From the NCBI GenBank assembly GCA_002269645.1, contig NIVC01000615.1, positions 124,001 through 188,000 on the forward strand: 64,000 nucleotides of DNA, given 5' to 3'. The stretch is from Macrostomum lignano (lineage: Eukaryota). The notes under the pieces are model-generated. The model saw nothing but the letters and a program-made list of their open reading frames with translations, ran no database searches and had not been told where the DNA came from. Below are positions 10,336 to 36,300 of this stretch, piece by piece (the first letter of the stretch is position 1; each line of letters opens with the position of its first letter). The position numbers and the translations under genes are program-made.

Positions 10336-10413
10336 TGAAATGTCGAGGTTGTGAAATGTCGAGGTTGTGAAATGTCGAGGTTGTAAAATGTCGAGGTTGT
10401 GAAATGTCGAGGT
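10336..10413. repeat. 16-bp tandem repeat TGAAATGTCGAGGTTG x~5
   Basis: Units at 10336, 10352, 10368, 10384, 10400. Confidence 0.9.
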
Positions 10414-10875: not shown

Positions 10876-12432
10876 ATGCTGTCAGAAGCGCTGAAAAACT
10901 TTGCCACGGACGCTACGACTCACAGTCTCGCTAGGCTGTCGAGCGACAGACCAGTCTACATCAAAGCCTTCTGGCTGCTTGCGTTCCTGACATTTCTGTG
11001 TCTGTGCTGTACAAGAATCGGCGAGTTTTACCACACTTTTCAACGAGGCGACCTGAAGACTACCATTCGAGCAGATCAAGTCAAGTTTGAATTCCCAGAC
11101 ATTTACATCTGCAATGAAAATCCAATTTCAGGCAGCTATTACGGCATTTTAAGTCCCGAAGACGTTGAGCTAATCTCTAAATACAAGCGTTTGGTCAGCG
11201 ACAGCATGGCTGGAATCGAATTCGGTGATTCGAACTTTGCACATTACACCTATTTTGCCCGTCTGGTCAACACTCTGCCCTATCAGTTTCTGTCTGACAA
11301 ACTGGGACGTCGGGTCAACCAGCTAGCCGTTCAGTTTTTATTCGACGGAGACCCGACGCCTAAATTTCGAATTCAGAGGCACAGCGCTCTTCTTAACTGT
11401 TTCACTCTAAACTTTACGGAGTCGGACTACGAGGTATTGAGCAACCCGGTTTCATACATACAGATGGGCCTATTTCTTGACTTGCTGGAGCCTCCAGTGG
11501 CATTTGACAACTCGGGGATTTCACCGGTGCATTGGAACTTGATGTTCGGGCTAGGATTTTCAATGCCGACTGGGTTCTCAGTTTTAATAACGCCCAGAGG
11601 TCAGCATCCGTCGGCTTCAGACGCCAGACTGCAGATTGGACCGGGGCAGAGCCATCGACTGTCGCTAAAGATGCAAGACACTGTCTACGAAGAAGACCTC
11701 AAAGGAGACAGATGCTTTGGAGATGATAAATCCGAGGAATTGCTCGATCCATACACAATGGGAGTGTACAAGGTTAAATACAGCTTAGACGAATGCGGTT
11801 ACCGTGAAATCGTCCGACAGTCAATGGAGAAGTTCAACTGCGTTCCCTGGCAAATGACTTTGCCTTGGGATCTCAGACGATCGCCCATGTGCTTCAACCT
11901 GACACAGTTTCCTAGAAGCCTAGTCCTGAACAAGACGGTAATGAAGGAGAGGGAGAGAGTTGTTGGATTTGCCACAGCCAAGTGTGCTAAACACGTGCCG
12001 TGCCGCAGACGTTCGTACACTTTCGACTATTCGACGAGTCTCTGGCCGACAGAAAAAGACTGGTCTGGCTTTCTGCGAGAGCACATTGCGACTAACCTGC
12101 TGGATCAGGGCGGCCCAACGCCCGGTCTTCGACAGCTGGTCCACAATGCAACATTTCGTCAGGTCCAAGAGTCGCTTGTCTACCTGGAGATGTTTGCGGA
12201 CAAGTATATGTGCCAGGAGGTTCGCCTGTCGTATGCCTACTCGTTCAACTCGCTGATAGCTGACATTGGCGGCATCCTGGGCCTGTTCTTGGGCATGTCG
12301 CTGCTGTCGCTGCTGGAAGTGCTGGAACTGCTGCACGACTGCGGCCTGATTGCGTGTCGACGGCTGCAGACGAGGACAGCGACAAGGAAGACGGCGGATG
12401 CCAGTTCAACCGATATGGCAGGTTCTAATTGA
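10876..12432 (+). CDS. DEG/ENaC ion channel subunit, paralog 2, intronless, 518 aa
   Basis: KAFWLL TM1, FPDIYICN, TM2 LIADIGGILGLFLGMSLLS; colinear with paralog 1. Confidence 0.93.
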   Translation: MLSEALKNFATDATTHSLARLSSDRPVYIKAFWLLAFLTFLCLCCTRIGEFYHTFQRGDLKTTIRADQVKFEFPDIYICNENPISGSYYGILSPEDVELISKYKRLVSDSMAGIEFGDSNFAHYTYFARLVNTLPYQFLSDKLGRRVNQLAVQFLFDGDPTPKFRIQRHSALLNCFTLNFTESDYEVLSNPVSYIQMGLFLDLLEPPVAFDNSGISPVHWNLMFGLGFSMPTGFSVLITPRGQHPSASDARLQIGPGQSHRLSLKMQDTVYEEDLKGDRCFGDDKSEELLDPYTMGVYKVKYSLDECGYREIVRQSMEKFNCVPWQMTLPWDLRRSPMCFNLTQFPRSLVLNKTVMKERERVVGFATAKCAKHVPCRRRSYTFDYSTSLWPTEKDWSGFLREHIATNLLDQGGPTPGLRQLVHNATFRQVQESLVYLEMFADKYMCQEVRLSYAYSFNSLIADIGGILGLFLGMSLLSLLEVLELLHDCGLIACRRLQTRTATRKTADASSTDMAGSN

Positions 12433-13454
12433 GCTTAGAGAAGCTTCGCAACTTTTACTAACTTTTCTGTTGTTTTAAATTCTTATATCTTTATAAACTG
12501 GTAATCTATTTAGAAAAATTCTTTTCCAGTTATTGTTAATTCCTGTCCTTTTGCTGTAGTTAGGCTCCTATTATGATATTATGATTTCGATGCAGACAGA
12601 CGAATCTTGAAAATTCCTCAATGAACTTTGCTGCTTCAGCCCTCTGTGGCATATCAATACTCGTATGCCTGTGAATATTACCATGCCTATTTGGACCAAA
12701 TGCATACGTGAAGAAATCCAACAATGGCATCGACTACTGGTTTTAAGTTAAAACAAATTTCTACTCCGCTGTAAATAATGATGGGTTTCGACCTTTCGGC
12801 CCCCTTGTGGGGAAGCCTTCGGGCCTCAGGTCTCAGAGATAAATCAATTCGAGTCCTGGCCTGCGATAGTGAGCGTGAGCGTAAACTGCGCTTCATCTAC
12901 CGCAACTGACTCAACATCCTCTTCAAAAATTAGTCAGAAATCTGCTTGTTTGGCACGCACTGTTTGCTAAGAAGAGCAACCATTTCCTGCCACTTTATTT
13001 GACCAGAGAAAATTAACCAGTATATTAGCTAGCTGTCGTGTAAAAATGACTCGCCATAAGAGTCATCCATGAGCAACGTTGCATACATTATTTAATGAAG
13101 ACTTTGCTAGATGGATTCGATCCCGATTAGGATTTTAATCCCAGAAAAAAGCTACTGGCAAAATTGATAGCTAATTTACACAGAGACAACACTTCAGCTT
13201 TCTAAATTGATCTCTGAGCTTAACAGTCATGGATCTTTGACTGTCCAGCTGTCAATCAAGACGTCACGATACGATATGTAGCAAGGCTGTTTACCGATGA
13301 CTGAAGCTTGATCCAGTTAGACAGTTAGAGTTAGTACTTGACAAACATACGGAGTTCGAGTTGGATCCCACAGGGGATAAAACTCTCAAACATGTCCGGT
13401 AACTGCAACACTGCTCTCATTGAGTTTGAAGCGCTCAACTCTCTCAGCTCAGCC

Positions 13455-15026
13455 ATGCTGTCAACCGCCATCGCAAAGTACGCCAAAGAGGCCACGACCC
13501 ACAGTTTGTCCCGTATCGCAGGCGAACGGCCTCTCTATGTCAGAGTCCTCTGGCTGCTCGTCTTCTTGGCCTCCGTCATCCTGTGCGTGGTGCGAATAGT
13601 TGAGACTTACAGCAGCTTTGCCAAAGCCGAGCTCAAAACCACCATTAGAGCCAATGAGCTGGACTTTGTCTTTCCCGAGCTGCACATCTGCAAAGAGAAG
13701 CCCATCTCCGGTAGCTACTCGGTCACGCTCAGCGCTGAAGACAATGCGTTGCTAAGCCGGTATCGAGCTCTGGTCAACCGCAGCCTCGCTGGAGTCTACA
13801 AGGAGCTCGTAGCTGACGACTTTCTGCCTGAGAACTACGCAATCCGGCTGATTAACACCCTGCCATTCCAGTTCCTCTTCGACAAGATGGCGCTCAGGGC
13901 CAGCCAACTGGTCTTCATGTACTATTTTGAAGGAAAATCGACTCCGAAAATTAGCACCTTCAGACACCCGTTGTACCTCAACTGCTTCACAATCGATTTC
14001 ACCGACAAGGAAATCCGATCCCTGCAAAATCCATCGAATTACTTTCAGATTGGCCTGTTCCTGGACCCTCCGCTGCCTCATTCATTCGACAACTCCACTG
14101 AGCAGGACGTTCTACCTCTATTCGGATCGTTCATCAACCCGAAGCCCTCGGACTGGACCTTCAGGCACGGCTTGGACTATTCTGTGGCTCGCGGATTCGA
14201 AATATTCATCACGCCTCGAGGCCAGCACCCCAGCTTCATGGACGCCACTCTGAACGTCGGGCCCGGCCAGAACCACCGCTTGAAAATCAAAATGAAGGAC
14301 ACCATCTTTGATGCCGACGTGAGCTCGAGATGTCTTGCGGCTGACAGCAGCAGCAAAAGTGTCAATATTTTCGATCCGTACACACAGGGCAAGCGAACCT
14401 TCAACTACAGCCACGTGGACTGCTGGTACAGAGAGATCGCACGGATGTCCTTGGAGCTGTTTAACTGCACTCCCTGGGGTTACCCGCTTCCTTGGGAGTA
14501 CAGATCTCTGCCTTCGTGCTTCAACCTGACGCAGTTCCCAAGCGGCACAATACTAACCAGTCGGTTACTGGAAGACAGGGAGATGATGCTGTACAAAGCA
14601 ACGCTGCACTGCGCTAACAAGGTTCCGTGTCGTCAGAGAACTTACAGCTACGAATATTCGTCGGCTCAGTGGCCTACGGAAAGAGATTGGCAGATGTACT
14701 TCAAGAAGTACATCGCATTGTATAAGGTAGAGAAGAACGGTCTCACGCCAGGCTTCTCTTACCTGGTGCGCAATGCCACAATGGAGCAGGTGCGCCAGTC
14801 ACTACTATTCTTAGAAGTATCTGGCGCACAACTTCACAGCCAGGAGGTGCGGCTGTCTCCGGCGTACAGCTTCAACTCATTGGTGGCGGATGTCGGCGGC
14901 CTGCTGGGCCTGTTCCTTGGCATGTCGCTGCTGTCGGCTCTGGAGCTGCTGGAGCTGCTGCACGACTGCTGCCTGATTGCCTGGGAACGGATTCAACAAC
15001 GATCGAACCGCGGACGAGACTGTTGA
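13455..15026 (+). CDS. DEG/ENaC ion channel subunit, paralog 3, intronless, 523 aa
   Basis: ATG 13455 (MLSTAIAKYA) aligns with the starts of paralogs 1 and 2 (MLSEAL). FPELHICK; TM2 LVADVGGLLGLFLGMSLLS. C-tail shortened by an 8-nt deletion relative to paralog 1. Confidence 0.92.
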   Translation: MLSTAIAKYAKEATTHSLSRIAGERPLYVRVLWLLVFLASVILCVVRIVETYSSFAKAELKTTIRANELDFVFPELHICKEKPISGSYSVTLSAEDNALLSRYRALVNRSLAGVYKELVADDFLPENYAIRLINTLPFQFLFDKMALRASQLVFMYYFEGKSTPKISTFRHPLYLNCFTIDFTDKEIRSLQNPSNYFQIGLFLDPPLPHSFDNSTEQDVLPLFGSFINPKPSDWTFRHGLDYSVARGFEIFITPRGQHPSFMDATLNVGPGQNHRLKIKMKDTIFDADVSSRCLAADSSSKSVNIFDPYTQGKRTFNYSHVDCWYREIARMSLELFNCTPWGYPLPWEYRSLPSCFNLTQFPSGTILTSRLLEDREMMLYKATLHCANKVPCRQRTYSYEYSSAQWPTERDWQMYFKKYIALYKVEKNGLTPGFSYLVRNATMEQVRQSLLFLEVSGAQLHSQEVRLSPAYSFNSLVADVGGLLGLFLGMSLLSALELLELLHDCCLIAWERIQQRSNRGRDC

Positions 15027-18330: not shown

Positions 18331-18730
18331 TTGCTTCAATGCCAAATTTAAGTTGCCAATTCTAAATTGCGTTGAAGCAGACTTCTTTTGCTTGCCATCT
18401 AAATGCTTTTAGACAAAGACCTCGCTAAAGCTATTGTGCATGGCGAAGCGAAGTCAGGTAGGTAGGAGAATGGGGGGGGCAGAGGATAACAAAAAATGGG
18501 GGTTTCGGGTTCTGACCCCTTCCCCCACTCACTGAGTGAGTCATCGATCCCCCACCCCCAGTGCCCCTGCATTCTGGCTTGCAGAGGACCTCGAGGGAGA
18601 TCAAGGAGACCCTGGGATATACCTGAAATCTGGATTTGGCTGCCAATAAAATAAAATTGAAAATAACTTTTACTATCACAAATACTTGACTCGATGACTG
18701 AATGAGAATCTTTAATTGTATTGTTTCTGT

Positions 18731-19675
18731 CGCCCCTGGTGCTGGCGCCCCTGGTGCTGGCGCCCCTGGTGCTGGCGCCCCTGGTGCTGGCGCCCCTGGT
18801 GCTGGCGCCCCTGGTGCTGGCGCCCCTGGTGCTGGCGCCCCTGGTGCTGGCGCCCCTGGTGCTGGCGCCCCTGGTGCTGGCGCCCCTGGTGCTGGCGCCC
18901 CTGGTGCTGGCGCCCCTGGTGCTGGCGCCCCTGGTGCTGGCGCCCCTGGTGCTGGCGCCCCTGGTGCTGGCGCCCCTGGTGCTGGCGCCCCTGGTGCTGG
19001 CGCCCCTGGTGCTGGCGCCCCTGGTGCTGGCGCCCCTGGTGCTGGCGCCCCTGGTGCTGGCGCCCCTGGTGCTGGCGCCCCTGGTGCTGGCGCCCCTGGT
19101 GCTGGCGCCCCTGGTGCTGGCGCCCCTGGTGCTGGCGCCCCTGGTGCTGGCGCCCCTGGTGCTGGCGCCCCTGGTGCTGGCGCCCCTGGTGCTGGCGCCC
19201 CTGGTGCTGGCGCCCCTGGTGCTGGCGCCCCTGGTGCTGGCGCCCCTGGTGCTGGCGCCCCTGGTGCTGGCGCCCCTGGTGCTGGCGCCCCTGGTGCTGG
19301 CGCCCCTGGTGCTGGCGCCCCTGGTGCTGGCGCCCCTGGTGCTGGCGCCCCTGGTGCTGGCGCCCCTGGTGCTGGCGCCCCTGGTGCTGGCGCCCCTGGT
19401 GCTGGCGCCCCTGGTGCTGGCGCCCCTGGTGCTGGCGCCCCTGGTGCTGGCGCCCCTGGTGCTGGCGCCCCTGGTGCTGGCGCCCCTGGTGCTGGCGCCC
19501 CTGGTGCTGGCGCCCCTGGTGCTGGCGCCCCTGGTGCTGGCGCCCCTGGTGCTGGCGCCCCTGGTGCTGGCGCCCCTGGTGCTGGCGCCCCTGGTGCTGG
19601 CGCCCCTGGTGCTGGCGCCCCTGGTGCTGGCGCCCCTGGTGCTGGCGCCCCTGGTGCTGGCGCCCCTGGTGCTGG
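18731..19675. repeat. Perfect 15-bp tandem repeat CGCCCCTGGTGCTGG x63
   Basis: 945 bp = 63 units, no mismatch seen; stop-free in the frames listed (PGAGA, GAPAP, WCWRP, LVLAP). Confidence 0.98.
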
Positions 19676-20094
19676 ACCCATAGAAGACTCTTTTTTCTAA
19701 GATTCTTGCAAATTACACAGAAAAATCGCCTTTTCGTCTGCTTTCGCGCTCGAGCTCCTAATTTTTGTTGACGATCTCCTTGTTAAGATAAAAAAGAGCT
19801 GAAGGGGGGGGGTAGTGTGTCACGGGCTCCCGCCGGGTCACGGAGGGGTGATTGGGGCAAATGGGTTATGATTCAACCATTGGGCCCACCGACCCCATCG
19901 TGGCTTCTCCAACAACACAAGCCAACCAACCCCTCCAAAGCCAAGCCCTTGCTTCTGAAGCTGCCCCATTCCCCCAGTCAGCCATATTGGAAATATATAA
20001 CGCGAAGAGCTCCCACCTGCACACAAGCTGCAATACGCACGGCTTCTCCTATTAAACAAAATCGAAGTGTTTCAACATCCAGAAAATCTAAAAA

Positions 20095-20487
20095 ATGTCC
20101 GACGAACAAGCAGCCGCCACTGCCGAGACCAAAGAGACGGTGACTACTGAGCAACCGAAAGCAGAAGAGACCGCAGCAGCCGAAGCTCAGGCTCCCTCGA
20201 CATCAGCCGAAGCAACCGAAGACGCCAAGAAGAAGGAGAAAGAAGAGAAAGAGAAGGTCAAGAAAGAAAAAGAGGAGCAAAAGAAACGAGAAGCAGAGGA
20301 GAAGAAGCGCAAAAGAGAAGAGGAGAAAAAAGCCAAAGCGGAGGCCAAAGCCAAGGCCAAAGCTGAAGCTGCGGAGTCTGCAGGCGCTGGAGGCAGTTCA
20401 ACTGCAAGGAAGCCGTGCTGGCTCACTGACAAGACCGACATGGACCTGCTGAACCGGGACAAGAACCAGATTAACTGCCACGTCAAT
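20095..20487 (+). CDS. cav: Caveolin alternative N-terminal exon A (131 aa, Lys/Glu-rich helix plus DLLNRD motif)
   Basis: Ends ...DMDLLNRDKNQINCHVN followed by a GTAAGT donor at 20488; phase 0 matches acceptor 26249. Confidence 0.8.
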
Positions 20488-20984
20488 GTAAGTCCCCTCC
20501 CATAGTATTTTATTAATCAGTCAAGCCAATCTATCCGATACGAATCAGCAGACACAGGTTGACTTTTTCAACATGCCAGTTCTGGCCATTTTTGCCAGTT
20601 CAGACATAATCTAAGCCAAGGGGGCAGCCTGGGTCCAAGTCCAATTGGGGTTTTTAGGCATCTATTCGAGATTAGTCATCACAGCGTCCAAACCAACCAA
20701 ACCAAACTCCCCAAACCAACAGAAACAAACGGCCCCAGCTTTGTGGAGTTTAGGAATTCTTTCGGTCAGATACTTCGTATTTAAACAGCGTTAAGCAAGA
20801 ACCCATTGCTTGTCTTTATATTGTTTGCTGCGCAAAATGCTATGCTTATCTACTGGCTCTCCTACTTGATACAGTAGTATCTCGCGAGTTTTCTGTCCGG
20901 TATAGGCTATTGGGAAAGTAAATTCAAAACAAAAATAGAAAATTTCAAATACTCGTTAGGAAGCAATAAATATGAATGAGAATT

Positions 20985-21330
20985 CTCTCTCCCTGTCTCC
21001 TCTCCATGTCTCCTTCTCTCCCTGTCTGTCTCCCTGCATGTCTCCTCTCCCTGCCTCCCTCTCTCACTCTCCCTCTCTCCCTAGCCCTCTACTCTCTGCC
21101 TCTCTGCCTCTCTGCCTCCGCCTCTCTGTGCAAAAATACTCTCTCCCTCTCTCCCTCTTCCTCTCTCCCTCTCTTACTCTCTCCCTCTCTCCCTCTCTCC
21201 CTCTCTCCCTCTCTTCCCTCTCTCTTTCTCTCTCCCGATCTCTCATGTCTCCCCTCTCTCTTTGTCTCCTCTCCCACTCTCTCCTGTCGCTGTGTCTCCT
21301 GTCTCCCTCTCTTTCTCTCTCCCTTCCTTC
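20985..21330. repeat. CT-rich low-complexity tract in caveolin intron
   Basis: Polypyrimidine CTCT/CTCC runs. Confidence 0.85.
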
Positions 21331-21423
21331 ATAATCACAACTATCGCATCCGCTCCCTCTGTTAGAAAGCTCCCTATCCTGTTCCTTTGCCTTCCCTTAG
21401 TAATAATTTCCTTCTAAAGTAAA

Positions 21424-21505
21424 GGCGCCAAAATAAGTGTCAGCTTAGGCGCCAAAATAAGTGTCAGCTTAGGCGCCAAAATGAGAGTCAGTTAGGGCGC
21501 CAAAA
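21424..21505. repeat. 24-bp tandem repeat GGCGCCAAAATAAGTGTCAGCTTA x~4
   Basis: GGCGCCAAAA at 21424, 21448, 21472, 21496. Confidence 0.9.
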
Positions 21506-21719
21506 TAATCTTTCTACTTCCAGACAGGTTGGTTCCTTGATAACTTGAACTTTACAGTCCTATTAGTATTAATTGGTTTTTGAAGTCGCAGTACGATTTC
21601 ACTAGTGAATTATTATATCTGACTGTGTGTCTCTCTAAATTATTTATGAATATTTTACTTTCAACTCTTTAGATTCTGTTTTTGCTTTCATAATTTCTGT
21701 TCATGCATACCAATATCTT

Positions 21720-21935
21720 TCTTACCCTCCATTCTCTCCCTCTCAGCCTTCATTCTCTCTCTCACCCTCCATTCTCTCCCTCTCACCCTTCATTCTCTCC
21801 CTATTACCCTCCATTCTCTCCCTCTCAGCCTTCATTCTCTCTCTCACCCTCCATTCTCTCCCTCTCACCCTTCATTCTCTCCCTCTCACCCTCCATTCTT
21901 TCCCTCTCACCCTTCATTCTCTCCCTCTCACTCTA
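21720..21935. repeat. 21-bp pyrimidine minisatellite (CTCACCCTCCATTCTCTCCCT)
   Basis: Direct inspection. Confidence 0.85.
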
Positions 21936-22211
21936 ACCCACGCTCTCTCACGCTGCAATCAACCTGAATAACTTTATGGTTTCGTCAGTAAACTAAGCTT
22001 TAAAGTACAGCTTATATGAAAGTCCAACTAGCAGCATGCTCTGATTTTCGTCTGGTCTTAAAAGACTACGTTAAAAGCCTTTTTAATGAGTTTTCCTACT
22101 CTGAAGTGGTGATTAAGTATGCCTAAGTTGAGTCTGCGGAGTTGACTGCTCAGCAGGAAATTACAGAACGTTCTTCCATTAAGTAGGCCAACGACAAAGT
22201 TTTGTGCATTT

Positions 22212-22212
<1 letters not shown>

Positions 22213-22299
<87 letters not shown>

Positions 22300-22378
22300 G
22301 ATATAGATAGATAGGTAGATAGATAGATAGATATAATTAGATAGATAGATAGATAGATAGATAGACGGATATATAGAT
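22213..22378. repeat. (AGAT)n microsatellite
   Basis: Direct inspection. Confidence 0.95.
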
Positions 22379-22953
22379 CTATCAATCACATCCAGATGGT
22401 TAAGCTAATTGTATGCACACTAAAGCTACTAAAAGTACGAAAGTGCAGCACAGCAAAACTTCACATATAGGCATTGAAGAGCATCACGGCTTGCAACTAC
22501 AAGTGGGAACAGGCTGTGTCTGCTGCAGCTGTGGGCAGGCAAGCAGGCAGGCACTATTTCGGTTCATTCAGTAAAACAAATACTCTGCATGCGAGCGAAT
22601 TCGGCCCGCCATTCCCGAGAGAGAGGGCGAGAGCGAGAGAGGTGCGTAACGCATTTTAGCCCGGTAAGGACGATCGAGCGATGAAGAAGGAAGCAGCGCT
22701 CGGTTGTTTGGCCCAAGTGAAGGCGACGGGACCGAATATTACATTAGGGACTTGGGGAAGGAGGCAACTGGGAATGGAATGCCAGGGAAGGAGCCTCATG
22801 TGACCTGCAGTCTCTTCGACCTTTCGTCCAGCCAATCGGCATCGAGGCCGGGGTTTCCGCCTCGCTTCCCACTCCCAGTATCTGGCCTTGATAAAGTCCA
22901 CCAGCAACCAGCTGTTGACTGGCTACTAGCTGCGTTCTACTCTGCGGTCAGTG

Positions 22954-23331
22954 ATGTCGGAGACTCCATCGACACCGCCTCAGGAAGCTGGCCAGAATGC
23001 TGGCGGCGATAGCGCCATCATGTTGTCGTCCGAAACTCAGGGAGACGAGTCTTCGACTTACCTACGAGCTGAAGGTGAAATAACTGGGCCAGCTGGAACT
23101 GCCGGCTCGGAGTCTGAGCTGCAGCAGCAGCAGTCAGTTGATGAAGCAACCGCCAGCTCAGAGGGCAAGCCGGGGACGGAGAAGCAGCGGACAGGCAGGA
23201 TTCCTCCGATTCGAATCCCGAAGGCGCCAAAGGTTGCTGGACGTCGGGTGACGCTGGAGAGGAACAAAGACTACAAAGAGCAGATGGACATTGTGACCAG
23301 AGATCCAAACTCGTTGAACATCCACTGCAAG
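22954..23331 (+). CDS. cav: Caveolin alternative N-terminal exon B (126 aa)
   Basis: ATG 22954 (MSETPSTPPQE...) to ...QMDIVTRDPNSLNIHCK, donor AAG|GTTGGG at 23332, phase 0. Confidence 0.75.
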
Positions 23332-23439
23332 GTTGGGAATTAAATATTAAATATCGTCTTGGTTACCTCTGAGTTTAGTGTCAGTTATTTGGTGTTAGGA
23401 GGCGTCAGTTTTAAGTAACAGAAAGTGTCAGCTCCGTAA

Positions 23440-23925
23440 TGTCAGGAGATGTCAGTTTGGGTGTCAGGAGATGTGAGTTTGGGTGTCAAGAGATTTCAGT
23501 TTGAGTGTCAGGAGATGCCAGTTTGAGTGTCTGGAGATGTCAGCTTGGGTGTCAGGAGATGTCCGACAGAGTGTCAGGAGATGTCAGCTTGAGTGTCAGG
23601 AGATGTCAGCTTGAGTGTCAGGAGATGTCAGGTTGGGTGTCAGGAGATGTCAGGTTGGGTGTCAGGAGATGTCAGGTTGGGTTTCAGGAGATGTCAGTTT
23701 GGGTGTCAGGAGATGTCAGGTTGGGTGTCAGGAGATGTCAGACTGAGTGTCAGGAGATGTCAGTTTGAGTGTCAGGAGATGCCAGTTTGAGTGTCTGGAG
23801 ATGTCAGCTTGGGTGTCAGGAGATGTCCGACAGAGTTTCAGGAGATGTCAGCTTGAGTGTCAGGAGATGTCAGTTTGGGTGTCAGGAGATGCCAGTTTGG
23901 GCGTCAGGAGATGTCAGCTTGATTA
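23440..23925. repeat. 22-bp minisatellite (GTCAGGAGATGTCAGTTTGGGT)
   Basis: Direct inspection; begins ~110 bp after the exon B donor. Confidence 0.92.
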
Positions 23926-25986
23926 AGTATCAGATAGTATCAGTTTCTTTGTTGTCAGGTAAAAGCGTCAGTGACGAAAAAATAAAAATTTCGTCACTAA
24001 CTTGGTAAGTTTGCAGATACTCAGAGCCAAGATTATCTGTAATATTGAGCTTGAATGATGTTGTATTGTTTAATAAAAATGTGCACCAGAATTCCCAGCT
24101 CATTAATTATTCATTAGTTTGCTCAGCCCGTCCGTGGTCAGCTGACAAGATAGGAAAATATTGCAGTTGCTTCTCCGAGAATCTATTTTTAGGTTAGATA
24201 AAAATGTACTTCTCTTAGTTCTTACTTTTAGGCGAAAGTTTTGCTAATAAATAACAATCAAAGGCAATTTGTGACTCCATATAGGACAAGTTGCAATCCA
24301 ATTATTTGCCACCAATTTGCCTTAGCAACCGCGGGCAGCAATCAGAAGAGGCGGAAGTTGAAATCCAATTTTCTTCTAGACTGCATGAGCCTCTCCCTCT
24401 CGTTCCTATCTGAAGCCTTTCTGCTTGAGAGCTATGTCACTTAGGTTTGTTAGCTAGTTAGTGGTGGCAAAGAAGATATGCTTCACTTTCTTTCTCTGCT
24501 TCCTGAAAAAAGAAAGAAAAAGTAAATGGATTGTCTTCTTTTGGGGAACAGGTTTTTTAATAAATTTTGGCTTAAACCCGTTGCCTGACTGCACGAAAAT
24601 CATTGCTGACTGACTACTTGGAGTAGACAAAAACGTTTATTACACTGCTAAATTCGTTGAAGTCTCCGCTCTGCTGTTGTCTAAGAATTCCCTAGAGCAG
24701 CCACAGTTAAACTGCCTCTATCCGGTTCTTGGCTCTTTTGTCACTTCACAATGGCAATTGAGCCCGCTCAAGGTTTTTGTATGGTGTCTTGATCTCAGCT
24801 TTCTTCTCTCCTCTCTCCTCCCCTGCCCTCTCTCCTCTCATCTTTTCTCTGGCCTGCAGTCACGAGCTGGATTCTCATATATATTAGCATAGATAGATAG
24901 CAGCAATTAGTGTGCTTGCACTTCTTGTACTTTGCTTGCATCGCAGTAAGAATTTCAATTAAAAAAATTGCTCCAACTGCTGCGACTGCAGCTTGTATAC
25001 AACTAAATTCCTTTTCGTATATGGGCATCTAAATTTGCTCGAACGAAAGATAATAATAATATTGCCCCAGGTTCGGAAGGGTTTAGGTTTTGTAGTGACA
25101 CTTCTGCCAGCCTCTCCATCACCATTGTTACTCGAAAACTATATACCTTAATTTAATAATGGCGAGTGGGCTTGGAATTTGTATATATATGCTCACTGCA
25201 GCCACTCTATAGCTCCTCTCCTCTGTCTGTGTTCTGGCACTCAGCAGTCTGCCATCCATTTGCAGAGAGCTTTAAGATAGAAAAAAGGAAGGAAGGCAAC
25301 GCTGAGCGTGCGCGGCTGTTCATTCGCTCATTGAGCTCGTTGTGTGCGCTGAGACAAGGAGGCCCACAGTCTGCAACCTGGATTTGTAGTTTGATAGCCG
25401 AATTGCAGCGTCATGTTTTATTAAATTGATCATAACTTCGGTTTGATTGAACCAATTTTTGTAAACTTAGCCTCATTTTAAAGCTTAATAAATTATTCGT
25501 GTTTGAGTAAAAGTTCACTGTTTAATAACCAATAGACTACGAGCTATTACTGGCAGAAGTTGTTATCAAAATACCAAAGTCGATACACTGTCGAACTAGA
25601 CGTTGAAAACCTACTCAATTTTTGAACCTTGATCAATTTTAGTTTTAAACAACTGAGACTCGATTTTTAGTATCTAATTAGAGATTTAGTATATTTAGAT
25701 TAAAAAACTTATCTATACAGCTGTCGGGCAGTGAGGTGAAGAGTTGTCAGTCCAGATTCTGGCACTAGGACTCCTTGTCTCAGGTCTTGAACTCGACTAT
25801 ACGCATCTTTTAAACGCACACAGCTAATCTCTCTTCTCGTCCAACAGCTCCCATTGAGAAGCCATAAAATAAGTTTTAGCTAACACAAACCCTCAACAGT
25901 TTAAAAAGACCTAGAGGTCAAACAGTGGTTGGCTCATTAGGTAGTCTTGTTGTCAACAAAACAAAACAGAAGCCGCAGCTCACGAA

Positions 25987-26157
25987 ATGCAAGAAGACGA
26001 GTTTGAGGATGTCACAGACAGCCCTCCGGCAGGAGCTAGAGAGCCTGAGGTTTCCCAATCGCAAGTTGAAGTGAAACCTAAGAAGGCAGCAAATCAGGAA
26101 GCTGTAGTGATAGACCTGGTCAATAGGGACCCTGATTTAATCAATCAGCACTTGAAG
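25987..26157 (+). CDS. cav: Caveolin alternative N-terminal exon C (57 aa)
   Basis: MQEDEF...VIDLVNRDPDLINQHLK, donor AAG|GTGACA at 26158; 92-bp phase-0 intron to 26249. Confidence 0.88.
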
Positions 26158-26249
26158 GTGACATTTTAATTCCTTCTTTCACAACTTGACTGTTTGATTT
26201 TGCAAATTGTTTCTTTCAATTTTGTTGAAAAAAATTTTACTCCACCCAG

Positions 26250-26327
26250 GTGCAATTCGAAGACATCATTGCTGAACCGGATCCCACTGTCTTCAGCTTT
26301 GACAATGTGTGGACCTGCAGCTTCAAG
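26250..26327 (+). CDS. cav: Caveolin shared exon (signature motif)
   Basis: Acceptor CCACCCAG; VQFEDIIAEPDPTVFSFDNVWTCSFK contains the caveolin signature FEDxIAEP; donor GTGAGT at 26328. Confidence 0.93.
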
Positions 26328-26404
26328 GTGAGTTCTTTAATTCTTTAATTTTTTTATCAATAAAACGGATGTTAGCAAGGTTAGCACCCTTCAACAAAAA
26401 AATT

Positions 26405-26860
26405 CTCAAAATTCTAAATTCCCCTTGATAAGTTTCCACAGATTCTAAATTTCCATAAGTGAATTTCTGCAGATTCTAAATTCCCCTCGAGATGAATTTC
26501 TGCAGATTCTAAATTTCCACAGATTCTGAATTTCCCTAGATGAATTTCTGCAGATTCTAAATTCCCCTAGATGAATTTCCACAGATTCTAAATTCCCCTA
26601 GATGAATTTTGCGGATTCTAAATTTCCACACATTCTAAATTCCCCTAGATGAATTTCTGCAGATTCTAAATTCCTCTAGATGAATTTCTGCAGATTCTAA
26701 ATTCCCCTGGATGAATTTCTGCCGATTCTAAATTCCCCTAGTTGAATTTCTGCAGATTCTAAATTCCCCTGGATGAATTTCTGTAGAGTCTAAATTCCCC
26801 TAGATAAATTTCCACAGATTCTAAATTCCCCTGGATGAATTTCCGCAGACTAAAAATTCC
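26405..26860. repeat. ~31-bp minisatellite (GATTCTAAATTCCCCTAGATGAATTTCTGCA) filling caveolin intron 26328-26880
   Basis: Direct inspection. Confidence 0.9.
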
Positions 26861-26880
26861 AATCCAACAATGAACCGCAG

Positions 26881-27144
26881 GTGTTCACCTCTACAAAGCT
26901 GTGGTGCTACAGAATCATCTCGCTGATCTGCGCCATCCCAGCCGCCATCTGCTGGGGCATCGAGTTCGCTATGCTGTCATTCTGCACCATCTGGTGCTGG
27001 CAGCCGAGCCTGAAGGCCTTTGACATCTCGCTGTGGTACACCCGCCGAATCTACGAGATCCTGCTTAAGGTGTTTGTCGAGCCGTGCTTCCACGCCTTTG
27101 GCAAATGTCTCAGCCACATTGTGGTCACGGTTCGACGGGAGTAA
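26881..27144 (+). CDS. cav: Caveolin shared terminal exon (scaffolding/intramembrane domain)
   Basis: Acceptor CCGCAG at 26880. VFTSTKLWCYRIISLICAIPAAICWGIEFAMLSFCTIWCWQP...FGKCLSHIVVTVRRE* matches the caveolin pattern TKYWxYR..P.A..WGI.FA..SF..IW...P. AATAAA at 27301. Confidence 0.93.
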   Translation: MFTSTKLWCYRIISLICAIPAAICWGIEFAMLSFCTIWCWQPSLKAFDISLWYTRRIYEILLKVFVEPCFHAFGKCLSHIVVTVRRE

Positions 27145-30375: not shown

Positions 30376-33300
30376 ATGCATAACTGGCCGTTTTCTTCTC
30401 GTGAAAGTGAACAGTACACTGAATCCTATCCTGTTCAACTGTTGTAAGTAACCCTGAAAAGTTCTCAAATTTTATGTACAATATTATGTACAGCTTGATT
30501 AGGTATTTCCTTTATTAAATACAATATTAATTACCTCAGCGTGAACCATCGTGGCTTCGAGCGAGCCTCAGAAACTATCTGGTTTGGCACTTCCCCAAGC
30601 GACGTTCCAAATCTGGCACTGGGAAACTCCGACCCAACCATCTTCTCATCGTACACTGGACCAGACAATGGCTTGGTCACCGGATGCGTTGCCGACACTG
30701 AGAATGGCGGAGGCGGCGGTAATTCCAGCCGGAAAACGGGATTTAATAGAGGTATGCTGCGGAAGTTGAATGGAATTAAGAGACCCCCATACAGAACACA
30801 ATGACCCCCCATACAGAACACAATGACCCCCCATACAGAACACAATGACCCCCATACAGAACACAATGACCCCCCATACAGAACACAATGACCCCCCATG
30901 CAGAACACAATGACCCCCCATACAGAACACAATGACCCCCATACAGAACACAATGACCCCCCATGCAGAACACAATGACCCCCCATACAGAACACAATGA
31001 CCCCCCATACAGAACACAATGACCCCCCATACAGAACACAATGACCCCCCATACAGAACACAATGGCCCCCCATACAGAACACAATGACCCCCATACAGA
31101 ACACAATGACCCCCCATACAGAACACAATGACCCCCCATACAGAACACAATGACCCCCATACAGAACACAATGACCCCCCATACAGAACACAATGACCCC
31201 CATACAGAACACAATGACCCCCATACAGAACACAATGACCCCCCATGCAGAACACAATGACCCCCCATACAGAACACAATGACCCCCCATACAGAACACA
31301 ATGACCCCCCATGCAGAACACAATGACCCCCCATACAGAACACAATGACCCCCCATACAGAACACAATGACCCCCATACAGAACACAATGACCCCCCATA
31401 CAGAACACAATGACCCCCCATACAGAACACAATGACCCCCATGCAGAACACAATGACCCCCCATACAGAACACAATGACCCCCATACAGAACACAATGAC
31501 CCCCCATACAGAACACAATGGCCCCCCATACAGAACACAATGACCCCCATACAGAACACAATGACCCACCATGCAGAACACAATGACCCCCCATACAGAA
31601 CACAATGACCCCCCATACAGAACACAATGGCCCCCCATACAGAACACAATGACCCCCATACAGAACACAATGACCCCCCCCATACAGAACACAATGACCC
31701 CCATACAGAACACAATGACCCCCATGCAGAACACAATGACCCCCCATGCAGAACACAATGACCCCCCATACAGAACACAATGACCCCCCATACAGAACAC
31801 AATGACCCCCCATACAGAACACAATGACCCCCATACAGAACACAATGACCCCCCATACAGAACACAATGACCCCCATGCAGAACACAATGACCCCCCCAT
31901 ACAGAACACAATGACCCCCATACAGAACACAATGACCCCCCATACAGAACACAATGACCCCCCATACAGAACACAATGACCCCCATACAGAACACAATGA
32001 CCCCCCATGCAGAACACAATGACCCCCCATACAGAACACAATGACCCCCATACAGAACACAATGGCCCCCCATACAGAACACAATGACCCCCATACAGAA
32101 CACAATGACCCCCCCATACAGAACACAATGACCCCCATACAGAACACAATGACCCCCATGCAGAACACAATGACCCCCCATACAGAACACAATGACCCCC
32201 CATACAGAACACAATGACCCCCATACAGAACACAATGACCCCCATACAGAACACACTGACCCCCATACAGAACACAATGACCCCCATACAGAACACAATG
32301 ACCCCCATACAGAACACAATGACCCCCCATACAGAACACAATGACCCCCCATACAGAACACACTGACCCCCCATACAGAACACACTGTCCCCTTTCTAGA
32401 ACACACTGACCCCCTTTCTAGAACACACTGACCCCCTTTCTATAACACACTGACCCCCTTTCTAGAACACACTGACCCCCTTTCTAGAACACACTGACCC
32501 CCTGTCTAGAACATACTTATCCAGTAAAGCCCACCCGAAAGTCATATAAAATTGAAAGTAAAGTTCCACTAGATTTATTCTATGAGTGTGTTCTAGAAAG
32601 TGTTCTTTGAGTGTGTTGTTTGAGTGTGACTAGAACACACTTTGAGAACACACTTTGAGTCCCCCTTTCTAGAACACACTGACCCCCTTTCTAGAACACA
32701 CTGACCCCCTTTCTAGAACACACTGACCCCTTTCTAGAACACACTGACCCCCTTTCTAGAACATACTTATCCAGTAAAGCCCACCCGAAAGTAATATAAA
32801 ATTGAAAGTAAAGTTCCACTAGATTTATTCTATAAAATTTCACGCAACTTGCAGCCAAATGATTTATGACTGTGCTGACCTAGTTGAGCAGTATATATAA
32901 ATGTATGTGCAGACTTGCGTGAAGAATTAAGAAAGTTGAAAGTTATACATTTCGTCATAACTTGGGAATTTCCAATATTACACACACACATACACACACA
33001 GGCCGTACACGTGATCTTCTCTCCTCTCCCTATTCCTTTCCTTGACTTGGTCTGACCAACCTCAATGCTCAATAGCTTCTACTATTCCTTGAGAAATCGA
33101 TCGGTCTGTGTCTTAATCTCTTTCCCACAACTGCACAGCCATTGCCATTTCAATTGGACAAAGTCAGCAATGTTTGAGCACCGCGAGAAAGACAAAAAAT
33201 TGAAATACAAATTGGCGAAGATTTTACGTAGTTTCTACGTGCATGTAAAAAGTAATATTTTCTGTTTTTCTCACTTTCAGCTTAACAATTAATTAATATT

Positions 33301-36300
33301 TCTTAAGCTCATTGCCCGCTGGAATTGCTTGACGCTTTCTGTTAATCTTCGATTCATTAGATTTTCTTTGAGTCAGTCCCTTCTGTCTCCTCGTCTCCCT
33401 TCTGTCTCCTCGTCTCCCTTCTGTCTCCTCGTCTCCCTTCTGTCTCCTCGTCTCCCTCTCTGTCTCCTCGTCTCCCTTCTGTCTCCTCGTCTCCCTTCTG
33501 TCTCCTCGTCTCCCTTCTGTCTCCTCGTCTCCCTTCTGTCTCCTCGTCTCCCTTCTGTCTCCTCGTCTCCCTCTCTGTCTCCTCGTCTCCCTTCTGTCTC
33601 CTCGTCTCCCTTCTGTCTCCTCGTCTCCCTCTCTGTCTCCTTGTCTCCCTTCTGTCTCCTCGTCTCCCTCTCTGTCTCCTTGTCTCCCTTCTGTCTCCTC
33701 GTCTCCCTCTCTGTCTCCTTGTCTCCCTTCTGTCTCCTCGTCTCCCTCTCTGTCTCCTCGTCTCCCTTCTGTCTCCTCGTCTCCCTTCTGTCTCCTCGTC
33801 TCCCTTCTGTCTCCTCGTCTCCCTTCTGTCTCCTCGTCTCCCTTCTGTCTCCTCGTCTCCCTTCTGTCTCCTTGTCTCCCTCTCTGTCTCCTTGTCTCCC
33901 TGTCTGTCTCCTTGTCTCCCTCTCTGTCTCCTTGTCTCCCTGTCTGTCTCCTTGTCTCCCTCTCTATCTCCTTGTCTCCCTCTCTGTCTCCTTGTCTCCC
34001 TCTCTGTCTCCTTGTCTCCCTGTCTGTCTCCTTGTCTCCCTCTCTGTCTCCTTGTCTCCCTGTCTGTCTCCTTGTCTCCCTTCTGTCTCCTTGTCTCCCT
34101 GTCTGTCTCCTTGTCTCCCTCTCTGTCTCCTTGTCTCCCTCTCTGTCTCCTTGTCTCCCTCTCTGTCTCCTTGTCTCCCTCTCTGTCTCCTCGTCTCCCT
34201 TCTGTCTCCTCGTCTCCCTCTCTGTCTCCTTGTCTCCCTCTCTGTCTCCTTGTCTCCCTGTCTGTCTCCTTGTCTCCCTCTCTATCTCCTTGTCTCCCTC
34301 TCTGTCTCCTTGTCTCCCTCTCTGTCTCCTTGTCTCCCTGTCTGTCTCCTTGTCTCCCTCTCTGTCTCCTTGTCTCCCTGTCTGTCTCCTTGTCTCCCTC
34401 TCTGTCTCCTTGTCTCCCTCTCTGTCTCCTTGTCTCCCTCTCTGTCTCCTTGTCTCCCTCTCTGTCTCCTCGTCTCCCTCTCTGTCTCCTCGTCTCCCTC
34501 TCTGTCTCCTTGTCTCCCTCTCTGTCTCCTTATCTCCCTCTCTATCCCCTTATCTCCCTCTCTGTCTCCTTGTCTCCCTCTCTGTCTCCTTGTCTCCCTC
34601 TCTGTCTCGGACTTGTCTCCCTCTCTGTCTCCTTGACTCCCTCTCTATCTCCTGTCTCCCTCTCTATCCCCTTATCTCCCTCTCTGTCTCCTTGTCTCCC
34701 TCTCTATCCCCTTATCTCCCTCTCTGTCTCCTTGTCTCCCTCTCTGTCTCCTTGTCTCCCTCTCTATCCCCTTATCTCCCTCTCTGTCTCCTTGTCTCCC
34801 TCTCTGTCTCCTTGTCTCCCTCTCTGTCTCCTTGTCTCCCTCTCTGTCTCCTTGTCTCCCTCTCTGTCTCCTTATCTCCCTCTCTATCCCCTTATCTCCC
34901 TCTCTGTCTCCTTGTCTCCCTCTCTGTCTCCTTGTCTCCCTCTCTGTCTCCTTGTCTCCCTCTCTGTCTCGGACTTGTCTCCCTCTCTGTCTCCTTGACT
35001 CCCTCTCTATCTCCTGTCTCCCTCTCTATCCCCTTATCTCCCTCTCTGTCTCCTTGTCTCCCTCTCTATCCCCTTATCTCCCTTCTGTCTCCTTGTCTCC
35101 CTCTCTGTCTCCTTGTCTCCCTCTCTATCCCCTTATCTCCCTCTCTGTCTCCTTGTCTCCCTCTCTGTCTCCTTGTCTCCCTCTCTGTCTCCTTGTCTCC
35201 CTCTCTGTCTCCTTGTCTCCCTCTCTGTCTCCTTGTCTCCCTATCTGTCTCCTTGTCTCCCTCTCTGTCTCCTTGTCTCCTTCTCTGTCTCCTTGTCTCC
35301 CTCTCTGTCTCCTTGTCTCCTTCTCTGTCTCCTTGTCTCTCTCTCTGTCTCCTTATCTCCCTCTCTGTATCTTAGTCCCCCTCTCTGTCTCCTTGTCTCC
35401 CTCTCTGTCTCCTTGTCTCCCTCTCTGTCTCCTTGACTCCCTCTCTATCTCCTGTCTCCCTCTCTATCCCCTTATCTCCCTCTCTGTCTCCTTGTCTCCC
35501 TCTCTATCCCCTTATCTCCCTCTCTGTATCTTAGTCTCCCTCTCTGTCTCCTTGTCTCCCTCTCTGTCTCCTTGTCTCCCTCTCTGTCTCGGACTTGTCT
35601 CCCTCTCTGTCTCCTTGACTCCCTCTCTATCTCCTGTCTCCCTCTCTATCCCCTTATCTCCCTCTCTGTCTCCTTGTCTCCCTCTCTATCCCCTTATCTC
35701 CCTCTCTGTATCTTAGTCTCCCTCTCTGTCTCCTTGTCTCCCTCTCTGTCTCCTTGTCTCCCTCTCTGTCTCCTTATCTCCCTCTATATCCCCTTATCTC
35801 CCTCTCTGTCTCCTTGTCTCCCTCTCTGTCTCCTTGTCTCCCTCTCTGTCTCCTTGTCTCCCTCTCTGTCTCGGACTTGTCTCCCTCTCTGTCTCCTTGA
35901 CTCCCTCTCTATCTCCTGTCTCCCTCTCTATCCCCTTATCTCCCTCTCTGTCTCCTTGTCTCCCTCTCTATCCCCTTATCTCCCTCTCTGTATCTTAGTC
36001 TCCCTCTCTGTCTCCTTGTCTCCCTCTCTGTCTCCTTGTCTCCCTCTCTGTCTCCTTGTCTCCCTCTCTATCCCTTATCTCACTCTCTGTATCTTAGTCT
36101 CCCTCTCTGTCTCCTTGTCTCCCTCTCTGTCTCCTTGTCTCCCTCTCTGTCTCCTTGTCTCCCTCTCTATCCCCTTATCTCCCTCTCTGTCTCCTTATCT
36201 CCCTCTCTATCCCCTTATCTCCCTCTCTGTCTCCTTGTCTCCCTCTCTGTCTCCTTATCTCCCTCTCTATCCCCTTATCTCCCTCTCTGTCTCCTTGTCT

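What the first reader, a model, noticed from the sequence alone, without database searches (positions are those of the whole stretch)
20095..27144. One caveolin core with three tandem-duplicated alternative N-terminal exons (variable/constant architecture)
Seen: exons A (20095-20487), B (22954-23331) and C (25987-26157) each start with their own ATG, end in a homologous motif (MDLLNRDKNQINCHVN / MDIVTRDPNSLNIHCK / IDLVNRDPDLINQHLK) and have a phase-0 donor. Only one FEDxIAEP exon and one terminal exon follow, predicting isoforms of 244, 239 and 170 aa. Established: human CAV1 has an intron at the same position (after DLVNRDPKHLNDDVVK65), and this segment holds the PIN motif with Arg54 that locks protomers in the 8S disc. 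The Arg is kept in all three exons; exon A lacks the Pro56 equivalent. Inference: a clustered-protocadherin/UGT1-like way to build caveolin discs with different protomer locks and cytosolic tails from one gene; I know of no description of this for caveolins.
Basis: partly seen in the sequence, partly recalled or inferred. Interest (0 to 1): 0.75.

Follow-up and report, generated by a model that had tools for sequence, protein, structure and literature searches.

The report
Caveolin gene with alternative first exons
A flatworm (Macrostomum lignano) caveolin gene has one constant membrane-disc core preceded by two confirmed, and probably three, interchangeable first exons, each supplying its own start codon, tail and "pin" oligomerisation motif; the same layout is in its two paralogs and in clams, is already in sequence databases, and I found no paper describing it.

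Summary
Exons A (20095-20487), B (22954-23331) and C (25987-26157) are intact ATG-started ORFs. Each ends in a caveolin pin-like motif followed by a phase-0 GT donor. Only one core follows (26250-26327 and 26881-27144).

Each tail adds about 25 bits to the Pfam Caveolin score. All three predicted isoforms align to human CAV1 (7SC0) through pin residues 49-60.

The window is M. lignano contig NIVC01000615.1.

- **B:** B+core is exactly GenBank PAA79829.1, a transcript-derived model.
- **C:** C+core is UniProt A0A1I8GQY0, from the sister copy of the locus.
- **Paralogs:** both other caveolin paralogs have the same B-type, C-type, single-core layout, and both isoforms are annotated for each.
- **Bivalves:** Mya arenaria (RefSeq isoforms X1/X2) and Mactra antiquata show the same design.
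- **A:** it occurs only at this locus. It is under coding constraint against a diverged second copy (dN/dS 0.26, one in-frame indel). No A+core protein is on record. Two ab initio models chain A in-frame into B, so its splice partner is unproven.

This is a new variant of a known kind, of moderate interest.

The parts
20095..20487 (+). First exon A (CDS, 131 codons). It encodes an acidic, Ala-rich start, a K/E-rich predicted long helix (residues 41-94), then a pin-like tail MDLLNRDKNQIN (20440-20475) and CHVN. Donor AAT|GTAAGT, phase 0. An in-frame TAA lies 3 nt upstream of the ATG.
   Evidence: The tail adds 25 bits to Pfam Caveolin. Against copy L004: dN/dS 0.26 and one 3-nt indel only. AF2 helix. 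No A+core protein is on record.
22954..23331 (+). First exon B (CDS, 126 codons). It encodes a disordered tail, the conserved PKVAGRRVTLE motif, pin MDIVTRDPNSLN (23284-23319) and IHCK. Donor AAG|GTTGGG, phase 0.
   Evidence: B+E2+E3 equals PAA79829.1 exactly. B-type exons are conserved in both paralogs. dN/dS 0.31 and no indels against L004.
25987..26157 (+). First exon C (CDS, 57 codons). It encodes a short acidic tail, pin IDLVNRDPDLIN (26110-26145) and QHLK. Donor AAG|GTGACA, phase 0. It is the most canonical of the three.
   Evidence: The sister-copy product equals A0A1I8GQY0. C-type isoforms of the paralogs are PAA74407.1 and A0A1I8I343.
26250..26327 (+). Constant exon E2 (26 codons): VQFEDIIAEPDPTVFSFDNVWTCSFK. 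It holds the signature motif and the residues (F, W) that align with the human His79/Trp85 pocket, which receives the neighbour's pin Arg. It is the shared acceptor (cccag|GTG) for all first exons.
   Evidence: It is 100% identical at the DNA level in copy L004.
26881..27144 (+). Constant exon E3 (87 codons plus stop): scaffolding, intramembrane and spoke regions and the C-terminal strand.
   Evidence: There are 6 synonymous and 0 non-synonymous differences against L004 across the core.
19994..20000 (+). TATATAA about 95 nt upstream of the ATG of A. It is a candidate core promoter element and is unvalidated.
   Evidence: Read from the sequence. The surrounding stretch is collinear with copy L004 (upA 95.5% identical), and the motif is read back from the L004 upstream translation. 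There is no TSS data.
22928..22951 (+). AG dinucleotides just upstream of the ATG of B. AG 22928-29 gives an in-frame exon start at 22930, adding LRSTLRSV, and is used by the fused model A0A1I8IL04. AG 22950-51 gives a start at 22952 and reads AAT|TGA, a stop, if joined to A.
   Evidence: The sister copy has a further in-frame AG, used by A0A1I8IKV9.
25943..25944 (+). AG upstream of C that would allow an in-frame exon start at 25945. Transcript-derived B isoforms do not use it.

Best explanation
This is a Type-II (pin-bearing) caveolin gene of Macrostomum lignano, Mlig000166.g2 on NIVC01000615.1. It has a constant two-exon core and mutually exclusive 5' coding exons that arose by tandem duplication of the first exon.

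Each first exon supplies a start codon, a different disordered or helical cytosolic tail, and its own copy of the pin motif. Each ends at the same phase-0 donor position.

Whichever first exon heads the pre-mRNA splices to the single E2 acceptor and skips any first exons in between. Choice of first exon is by its own promoter or, less likely, by SL trans-splicing.

The products share an identical disc-forming core, including the pocket residues in E2 that receive a neighbour's pin arginine. They differ in pin and tail, so they should be able to form homo- or mixed oligomers with different rims and cytosolic tails.

**Shown:** the exon anatomy, family membership, the B+core and C+core products, conservation of the B/C design in three paralogs, and the same design in bivalves.

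**Inferred:** that A also joins E2 directly, that each exon has its own promoter, and any functional difference between the pins.
For: - **Anatomy and single core:**
- **Family:** Pfam Caveolin 142-144 bits against a cut-off of 25. Alignment to human CAV1 7SC0 runs through the pin and across the junction.
- **B isoform:** exactly PAA79829.1, with a sister-copy version PAA71788.1. The annotation is transcript-derived.
- **C isoform:** A0A1I8GQY0.
- **Paralogs:** L001/L002 has B-type PAA75353.1 and C-type PAA74407.1 with identical cores. L003 has B-type PAA88293.1 and C-type A0A1I8I343.
- **B skips C:** transcripts go B->E2 without C in all three genes.
- **Exon A:** its ORF is kept in a copy whose non-coding DNA shows 4-6% substitutions and many frame-breaking indels. 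A has one 3-nt indel, dN/dS 0.26 (P=0.025; A+B P=0.003), and a strong donor kept as GTAAGT or GTGAGT.
- **Bivalves:** Mya arenaria RefSeq X1 and X2 differ only by tandem first exons 1a and 1b. Mactra has the same layout and the same intron positions.
- **Pin and pocket:** Arg54 inserts into the His79/Trp85 pocket and R54A disrupts 8S complexes (PMC9094659). The pocket equivalents lie in constant exon E2.
Against: - No A+core protein exists in about 15 billion sequences.
- The transcript-derived annotation of three copies starts the CDS at B.
- The only models containing A chain it in-frame into B, and in-frame AGs exist upstream of B and C.
- A is absent from both paralog loci within 10 kb upstream.
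- A lacks the otherwise near-invariant Pro of RDP.
- No TSS, CAGE or junction-read data could be consulted.
- The dN/dS tests rest on only 12 substitutions per exon.
Confidence: 0.7

Rival explanations
1. Exon A is not an alternative first exon. It is an upstream coding exon spliced in-frame into B, giving a protein of about 372-377 aa with two pin motifs in series, as in UniProt A0A1I8IKV9. Only B and C would then be alternatives.
For: A0A1I8IKV9 reads A+RSV+B+core and A0A1I8IL04 reads A+LRSTLRSV+B+core. In-frame AGs lie upstream of B in both copies. No A+core product is on record.
Against: - Both models are ab initio-style. A0A1I8IL04 fuses three ion-channel genes with the caveolin gene.
- The two models use different acceptors, and the one used in the sister copy (ctcAG) is ctcTG in the window.
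- In Mya arenaria an equivalent chained model (P0026) coexists with RefSeq models that give two alternative-first-exon isoforms.
- TransDecoder on the Mlig_3_7 transcripts called 239 aa from the ATG of B, not a 372-aa ORF.
- A keeps a 25-bit caveolin pin/hook match and the exact donor phase, which only makes sense next to E2.
Confidence: 0.15
2. Exon A is an unexpressed or decaying relic of a partial duplication. The gene has only two working first exons, B and C.
For: A occurs only at this locus and not in the two paralogs. It has lost the conserved Pro and the upstream V-G-x-x-V motif. It is not in the transcript-derived annotation.
Against: The 131-codon ORF, ATG and strong donor are intact in two diverged copies. 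dN/dS is 0.26 (P=0.025). The only indel is 3 nt, while flanking non-coding DNA carries about one indel per 100 nt.
Confidence: 0.13
3. The isoforms are the same but the choice mechanism differs. One long pre-mRNA from a promoter upstream of A is resolved by spliced-leader trans-splicing onto AGs just upstream of B or C, rather than by three separate promoters.
For: Between 30 and 39% of M. lignano genes are SL trans-spliced. Each first exon has a CAG within 12 nt upstream of its ATG, and these are conserved in the sister copy.
Against: - Only the AG of A partly fits the reported [T/C]TNCAG trans-acceptor motif.
- An AG within 12 nt upstream of each ATG is roughly what chance would give.
- With the donor of A upstream in cis, an acceptor at B would favour cis-splicing (the Conrad rule quoted).
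- The paralog B-type transcripts carry at least 111-183 nt of unspliced 5' leader (P0002 and P0017).
- TATA-like elements lie upstream of each exon.
Confidence: 0.15
4. The layout is an assembly artefact: collapsed or missing sequence hides separate cores for A and B.
For: The locus is rich in minisatellites, and the assembly is known to be redundant.
Against: There are no Ns. The independent contig NIVC01001138.1 has A, B, C, E2 and E3 in the same order with one core. NIVC01004274.1 has B, C, E2 and E3. The paralog and bivalve loci show the same design.
Confidence: 0.01

Closest known systems
Mya arenaria caveolin, RefSeq isoforms X1 (XP_052778957.1) and X2 (XP_052778959.1); the same layout in Mactra antiquata
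   Same: Two tandem first exons, each with an ATG, a pin motif and a phase-0 donor, precede one 78-nt FxDIxxEP exon and a shared remainder. The first two intron positions are identical. Ab initio predictors also chain the two first exons there.
   Different: The bivalve pair is a recent duplicate (about 60-65% identical, both short, about 43 aa). The flatworm B and C exons are old: they predate three paralogs and have very different tails (126 against 57 aa). There is a possible third exon, A. No publication discusses either case.
Vertebrate caveolin-1 alpha/beta isoforms from distinct mRNAs (Kogo et al. 2004, cited in PMC5715436)
   Same: N-terminal caveolin isoforms come from alternative 5' ends of one gene and have cell-type-specific expression.
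   Different: The beta isoform merely lacks the first 31 residues (my own knowledge). Both isoforms share the same pin motif (residues 49-60). Here each isoform brings a different pin.
UGT1A and clustered protocadherin variable-first-exon clusters
   Same: Tandemly duplicated, homologous 5' exons each carry a start codon and splice to common constant exons. The variable part carries the specificity module and the constant part the shared machinery.
   Different: Here there are only two or three variable exons rather than 9-22. The variable part is about 16-35 conserved residues plus a disordered tail, not a whole folded domain. Separate promoters and any stochastic or cell-specific choice are not shown. 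The comparison rests on my own knowledge of those loci.
Human CAV1 8S complex (PDB 7SC0) pin motif
   Same: The tails of A, B and C align with residues 49-60, with Arg54 and Asp55 conserved. The junction aligns with K65|I66.
   Different: A has Lys for Pro56. The pocket residue His79 is Phe in the flatworm. No structure or oligomer data exist for these proteins.

Membership tests
Caveolin (Pfam PF01146) | Significant match to the family profile over the signature motif, scaffolding, intramembrane and spoke regions | tested here: met
   142.2 bits (A), 141.6 (B) and 144.3 (C) against a cut-off of 25, over profile positions 3-6 to 131 of 133. phmmer against 7SC0 gives E 1e-32 to 2e-34.
Caveolin (Pfam PF01146) | Signature motif FEDVIAEP | tested here: met
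   FEDIIAEP in E2.
Type II caveolins (pin-bearing; Han et al. 2025, PMC12330381) | A pin motif equivalent to human residues 49-60, immediately N-terminal to the hook and signature motif, with the Arg54 equivalent | tested here: met
   All three tails align to residues 49-60. R and D are invariant in 12 of 12 sequences. P is present in B and C but not in A.
Type II caveolins (pin-bearing; Han et al. 2025, PMC12330381) | The pin actually contacts the neighbouring protomer in a disc-shaped oligomer | not testable with these tools
   No multimer prediction or experiment is available. The AF2 monomer from a single sequence has low confidence in this region.
Variable/constant alternative-first-exon gene (UGT1A or clustered-Pcdh style) | Two or more tandem, mutually homologous 5' exons, each with its own start codon | tested here: met
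Variable/constant alternative-first-exon gene (UGT1A or clustered-Pcdh style) | Each variable exon splices directly to the first constant exon and the others are skipped | tested here: inconclusive
   Met for B (PAA79829.1, transcript-derived) and C (A0A1I8GQY0), and for both types in the two paralogs. Not shown for A. The only A-containing models chain it to B.
Variable/constant alternative-first-exon gene (UGT1A or clustered-Pcdh style) | Each variable exon has its own promoter or TSS | not testable with these tools
   There is no CAGE, RAMPAGE or SL-read data. Only TATA-like strings read from the sequence and unspliced 5' leaders in the paralog B-type models.
Variable/constant alternative-first-exon gene (UGT1A or clustered-Pcdh style) | Variable exons lack a used 3' splice acceptor | tested here: inconclusive
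   AGs, some in-frame, exist upstream of B and C. Transcript-derived B isoforms do not use the AG upstream of C.

The most novel reading that the evidence does not exclude
Swapping the pin motif and N-terminal tail by tandem alternative first exons, on a constant disc core that carries the pin-receiving pocket, is an old and recurrent strategy of spiralian caveolin genes. It predates the three Macrostomum paralogs and is seen again in heterodont bivalves. It would let different cell types build caveolin discs with different rim locks and cytosolic tails, or mixed discs, from one gene. Exon A would add a third, long-helix-bearing, Pro-less pin variant.
Probability: 0.3. Interest if true: 0.6.

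Novelty: new variant of a known kind. Interest (0 to 1): 0.45.

Why it matters
The pin motif is the element shown to lock neighbouring protomers in the human CAV1 8S disc, and R54A disrupts the complex. It is thought to be the evolutionarily youngest caveolin module.

Genes that keep the disc core constant while offering two or three natural pin-plus-tail variants are ready-made experiments. They can show how much the pin tolerates change, whether variants co-assemble, and what the variable N-terminus does.

The finding also has a practical side. Gene predictors tend to chain these in-frame first exons into false double-pin proteins. Examples are A0A1I8IKV9 and A0A1I8IL04 in M. lignano, both of uncertain validity, and the Mya 'CAV1-like' 166-aa model, which conflicts with the RefSeq isoform models. 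Such models can contaminate caveolin alignments.

Tried and rejected
- **Second core in the window:** searched by tblastn and by motif regular expression. None found.
- **A-type exon at the paralog loci:** searched L001 and L003 up to 10 kb upstream. None found.
- **A+core protein:** looked for by exact look-up (window and sister-copy versions) and by homology search. Absent.
- **My own error on chaining:** I first concluded that in-frame chaining of A to B was impossible in the window because the sister copy's ctcAG is ctcTG here. That was wrong. A systematic scan found another in-frame AG at 22928-29, used by A0A1I8IL04. Sequence alone therefore cannot exclude chaining.
- **Contig look-ups:** P0022 and P0039 were not on record. 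P0026 gave the Mya locus instead.
- **Gigantopelta aegis locus:** uninformative. The gene model is poor and there is no pin exon within reach.
- **Lineus longissimus:** has two tandem whole caveolin genes rather than alternative first exons, within the 23.5 kb seen.
- **Trans-splice acceptor motif:** the comparison gave no decision.
- **AF2 of isoform A:** run from a single sequence. Only the K/E helix was confident, and it says nothing about the pin.
- **Literature searches:** no description of alternative pin-encoding exons.
- **Human CAV1 intron:** I could not confirm from a held paper that it lies after K65.
Full report

Yes. The window is eukaryotic DNA rich in minisatellites.

- A (20095-20487) is 131 codons, B (22954-23331) is 126 and C (25987-26157) is 57.
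- Each begins with ATG and ends in a phase-0 GT donor: AAT|GTAAGT, AAG|GTTGGG and AAG|GTGACA.

E2 (26250-26327) reads VQFEDIIAEPDPTVFSFDNVWTCSFK. E3 (26881-27144) follows good AG acceptors. The spliced products are 244, 239 and 170 aa.

There is only one core. tblastn of all three isoforms against the whole 64 kb finds no second core. The region contains no Ns.

A regular expression for the pin-like motif hits only these three sites in six frames of the window.

The homology of the three tails is far beyond chance:
- Pfam Caveolin scores the core alone at 117.1 bits (profile positions 24-131).
- It scores 142.2, 141.6 and 144.3 bits with the A, B and C exons attached, and the match then starts at profile position 3-6. 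Each tail therefore contributes about 25 bits.
- phmmer against the PDB aligns all three isoforms to human CAV1 (7SC0) through residues 49-60 and across the exon junction, which falls opposite K65|I66.

**2. What and whose is it?**

The window is Macrostomum lignano. Locus L005 from GenBank contig NIVC01000615.1 (assembly Mlig_3_7) is identical to the window over 24,191 bases.

The predicted isoform B is, residue for residue, GenBank PAA79829.1 (BOX15_Mlig000166g2). That annotation is a genome-guided transcriptome (StringTie, TACO and TBONE with trans-splice and poly(A) evidence, ORFs by TransDecoder; PMC5730564). So B->E2->E3, skipping C, is RNA-derived.

Isoform C is UniProt A0A1I8GQY0. It has one substitution relative to the window, and that sequence is exactly the C isoform of a second copy of the locus.

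**3. A second, diverged copy gives a test of constraint.**

Contig NIVC01001138.1 (L004) carries A, B, C, E2 and E3 in the same order with one core. A third contig (L006) starts too late to include A, but it has B, C, E2 and E3. This disposes of the assembly-artefact reading.

| Region | Difference between window and L004 | dN/dS (one-sided binomial P) |
|---|---|---|
| Non-coding DNA | 4-6% substitutions, about one indel per 100 nt, mostly not multiples of three | n/a |
| Exon A | one indel, of 3 nt; 6 synonymous, 6 non-synonymous | 0.26 (0.025) |
| Exon B | no indels | 0.31 (0.047) |
| A and B together | n/a | n/a (0.003) |
| Exon C | no indels; 1 synonymous, 1 non-synonymous | 0.26 (0.37, not significant) |
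| Core | 6 synonymous, 0 non-synonymous | 0 (0.0001) |

A keeps its ATG and a consensus donor (GTAAGT or GTGAGT) in both copies. Exon A therefore behaves as coding sequence, on moderate statistics.

**4.

M. lignano has two further caveolin paralogs, with cores 80-85% identical to this one. Both loci have a B-type first exon, a C-type first exon, one E2 and one E3. Both isoforms are annotated for each:
- L001/L002: B-type PAA75353.1 and C-type PAA74407.1, whose cores are identical to each other.
- L003: B-type PAA88293.1 and C-type A0A1I8I343.

B-type exons share PKVAGxRVxxE and then xDVxSRDPxxLNxHCK. C-type exons share VxGxQVxV and then RDPxxINQHL. The B/C duplication therefore predates the split of the three paralogs. 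In all three genes the B transcript bypasses the C exon.

No A-type exon was found within 10 kb upstream in either paralog. A is either a later addition or has been lost elsewhere.

The same architecture appears outside flatworms:
- In the bivalve Mactra antiquata there are two tandem first exons with ATG, pin and a phase-0 donor (L008 10001-10129 and 16696-16824). They precede one 78-nt E2 and the remainder, with the same intron positions.
- In Mya arenaria, I predicted exon 1a+core from a chained GenBank model. That sequence exists exactly as RefSeq isoform X1 (XP_052778957.1). Exon 1b+core is isoform X2 (XP_052778959.1). The two exons lie 1.2 kb apart before one core.

Lineus longissimus has tandem whole genes instead.

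**5. The weak point is exon A's splice partner.**

No A+core protein is in the collection of about 15 billion sequences. The transcript-derived CDS of three copies starts at the ATG of B.

The only models containing A chain it in-frame into B:
- A0A1I8IKV9 reads A-RSV-B-core and comes from the sister copy.
- A0A1I8IL04 is a 2064-aa fusion of three ASC channel genes plus A-LRSTLRSV-B-core, and comes from this copy.

I first thought the chain was impossible in the window, because the sister copy's ctcAG is ctcTG here. A systematic scan then showed another in-frame AG at 22928-29, and one upstream of C. Sequence alone does not exclude chaining.

Several points argue against the chain:
- The two models use different acceptors, and one is an obvious multi-gene fusion.
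- In Mya a chained model of the same kind (P0026) conflicts with the RefSeq models, which give the two first exons as alternatives.
- TransDecoder would have reported a 372-aa ORF if the assembled transcripts contained A in frame.
- A pin motif with the correct donor phase is only meaningful directly next to E2.

My estimates are about 0.6 for A->E2, 0.15 for A->B, and 0.13 for a silent relic. The remainder is undecided.

**6. How it most likely works.**

The transcript starts at one of the first exons. Its donor joins the single E2 acceptor.

Separate promoters are the simplest reading. TATA-like strings lie upstream of each exon. The paralog B-type models carry at least 111-183 nt of unspliced leader. 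This is inference.

SL trans-splicing is a live alternative in this species, where 30-39% of genes are trans-spliced. However, only the upstream AG of A resembles the reported [T/C]TNCAG motif.

At the protein level, the constant exons encode the whole disc-forming part. That includes the residues (Phe, Trp) aligned with the human His79/Trp85 pocket, which receives Arg54 of the neighbour's pin. R54A disrupts 8S complexes (PMC9094659; alignment). The variable exon brings the pin:
- Arg and Asp are kept in all three.
- Pro is replaced by Lys in A.
- The tails are very different: about 40 residues upstream of the pin in C, about 110 largely low-complexity residues in B, and in A a K/E-rich segment predicted as one long helix (residues 41-94, pLDDT 75-94).

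Because the pocket is constant, mixed oligomers are plausible. Whether the pins differ functionally is untested.

**7. Comparison with what is known, and novelty.**

Membership in the caveolin family and in the pin-bearing Type II class (Han et al. 2025, PMC12330381) is met at the sequence level.

Vertebrate Cav1 alpha/beta also arise from distinct mRNAs (Kogo et al. 2004, cited in PMC5715436), but they share one pin.

The UGT1A and protocadherin analogy holds for tandem homologous first exons joined to constant exons. It is proven here for B and C only. Promoter-per-exon is untested and the scale is small.

I found no paper describing pin-encoding alternative exons in any caveolin. The isoforms themselves are already in GenBank, UniProt and RefSeq.

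**Verdict.** This is a new variant of a known kind and a real feature of moderate interest (0.45). It is worth a short comparative and structural follow-up, and it is a useful warning about chained double-pin gene models.

Noticed in passing
window 13338-15026 (+): An intronless 562-aa ORF is a DEG/ENaC-type channel (Pfam ASC, 7e-50). It is not among the called genes of the GenBank locus covering it. UniProt A0A1I8IL04 fuses three such channels with the caveolin gene into a 2064-aa 'SRCR domain-containing' model, almost certainly a mis-prediction.
   Followed up: partly
window 18727-19675: A near-perfect array of 63 copies of a 15-nt unit (CTGGCGCCCCTGGTG) lies just upstream of exon A. It produces spurious 320-416 aa ORFs on both strands (GAPGAP..., WCWRP..., LVLAP...). 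Collinearity with the sister copy resumes only at about 19940, just downstream of the array.
   Followed up: no
window 20984-21324, 21720-21931, 22212-22378, 23440-23921, 26411-26860: Every long caveolin intron carries its own minisatellite or microsatellite: CT-rich 8/24-mers, a 21/42-mer, (GATA)n, 22 copies of a 22-mer, and a 31-mer array. They differ in copy number between the two locus copies.
   Followed up: no
L006 (NIVC01004274.1) about 1014-1374; protein PAA47975.1: A third copy of the locus has a frame shift inside exon B, so its annotated product (177 aa) starts from an out-of-frame ATG. This is either a PacBio indel error or a disabled copy.
   Followed up: no
window 22943-22944 vs L004 9990-9991 and L006: The window copy has TG where the two other copies have the AG (ctcAG|CGG) used as acceptor in model A0A1I8IKV9. 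This is a natural polymorphism that would change any A->B splicing between copies.
   Followed up: partly
window 20215-20376 (exon A residues 41-94): A K/E/A-rich stretch is predicted by AF2 as one uninterrupted 54-residue helix with high confidence. It looks like an ER/K-type single alpha-helix, which is unusual for a caveolin N-terminus.
   Followed up: partly
L007 (Lineus longissimus OU342998.1) 10001-13519 and 15824 onwards: Two caveolin genes lie in tandem. The second has two annotated products (154 and 156 aa), so this nemertean has whole-gene duplication plus some isoform variation.
   Followed up: no
window about 30376 onwards (+); L005 17423-24191: The gene downstream of the caveolin gene is annotated as a 539-aa PP2C-like protein. 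Its range overlaps long tandem-repeat tracts (30531-32406 and 33329-35716) that give very long spurious ORFs.
   Followed up: no
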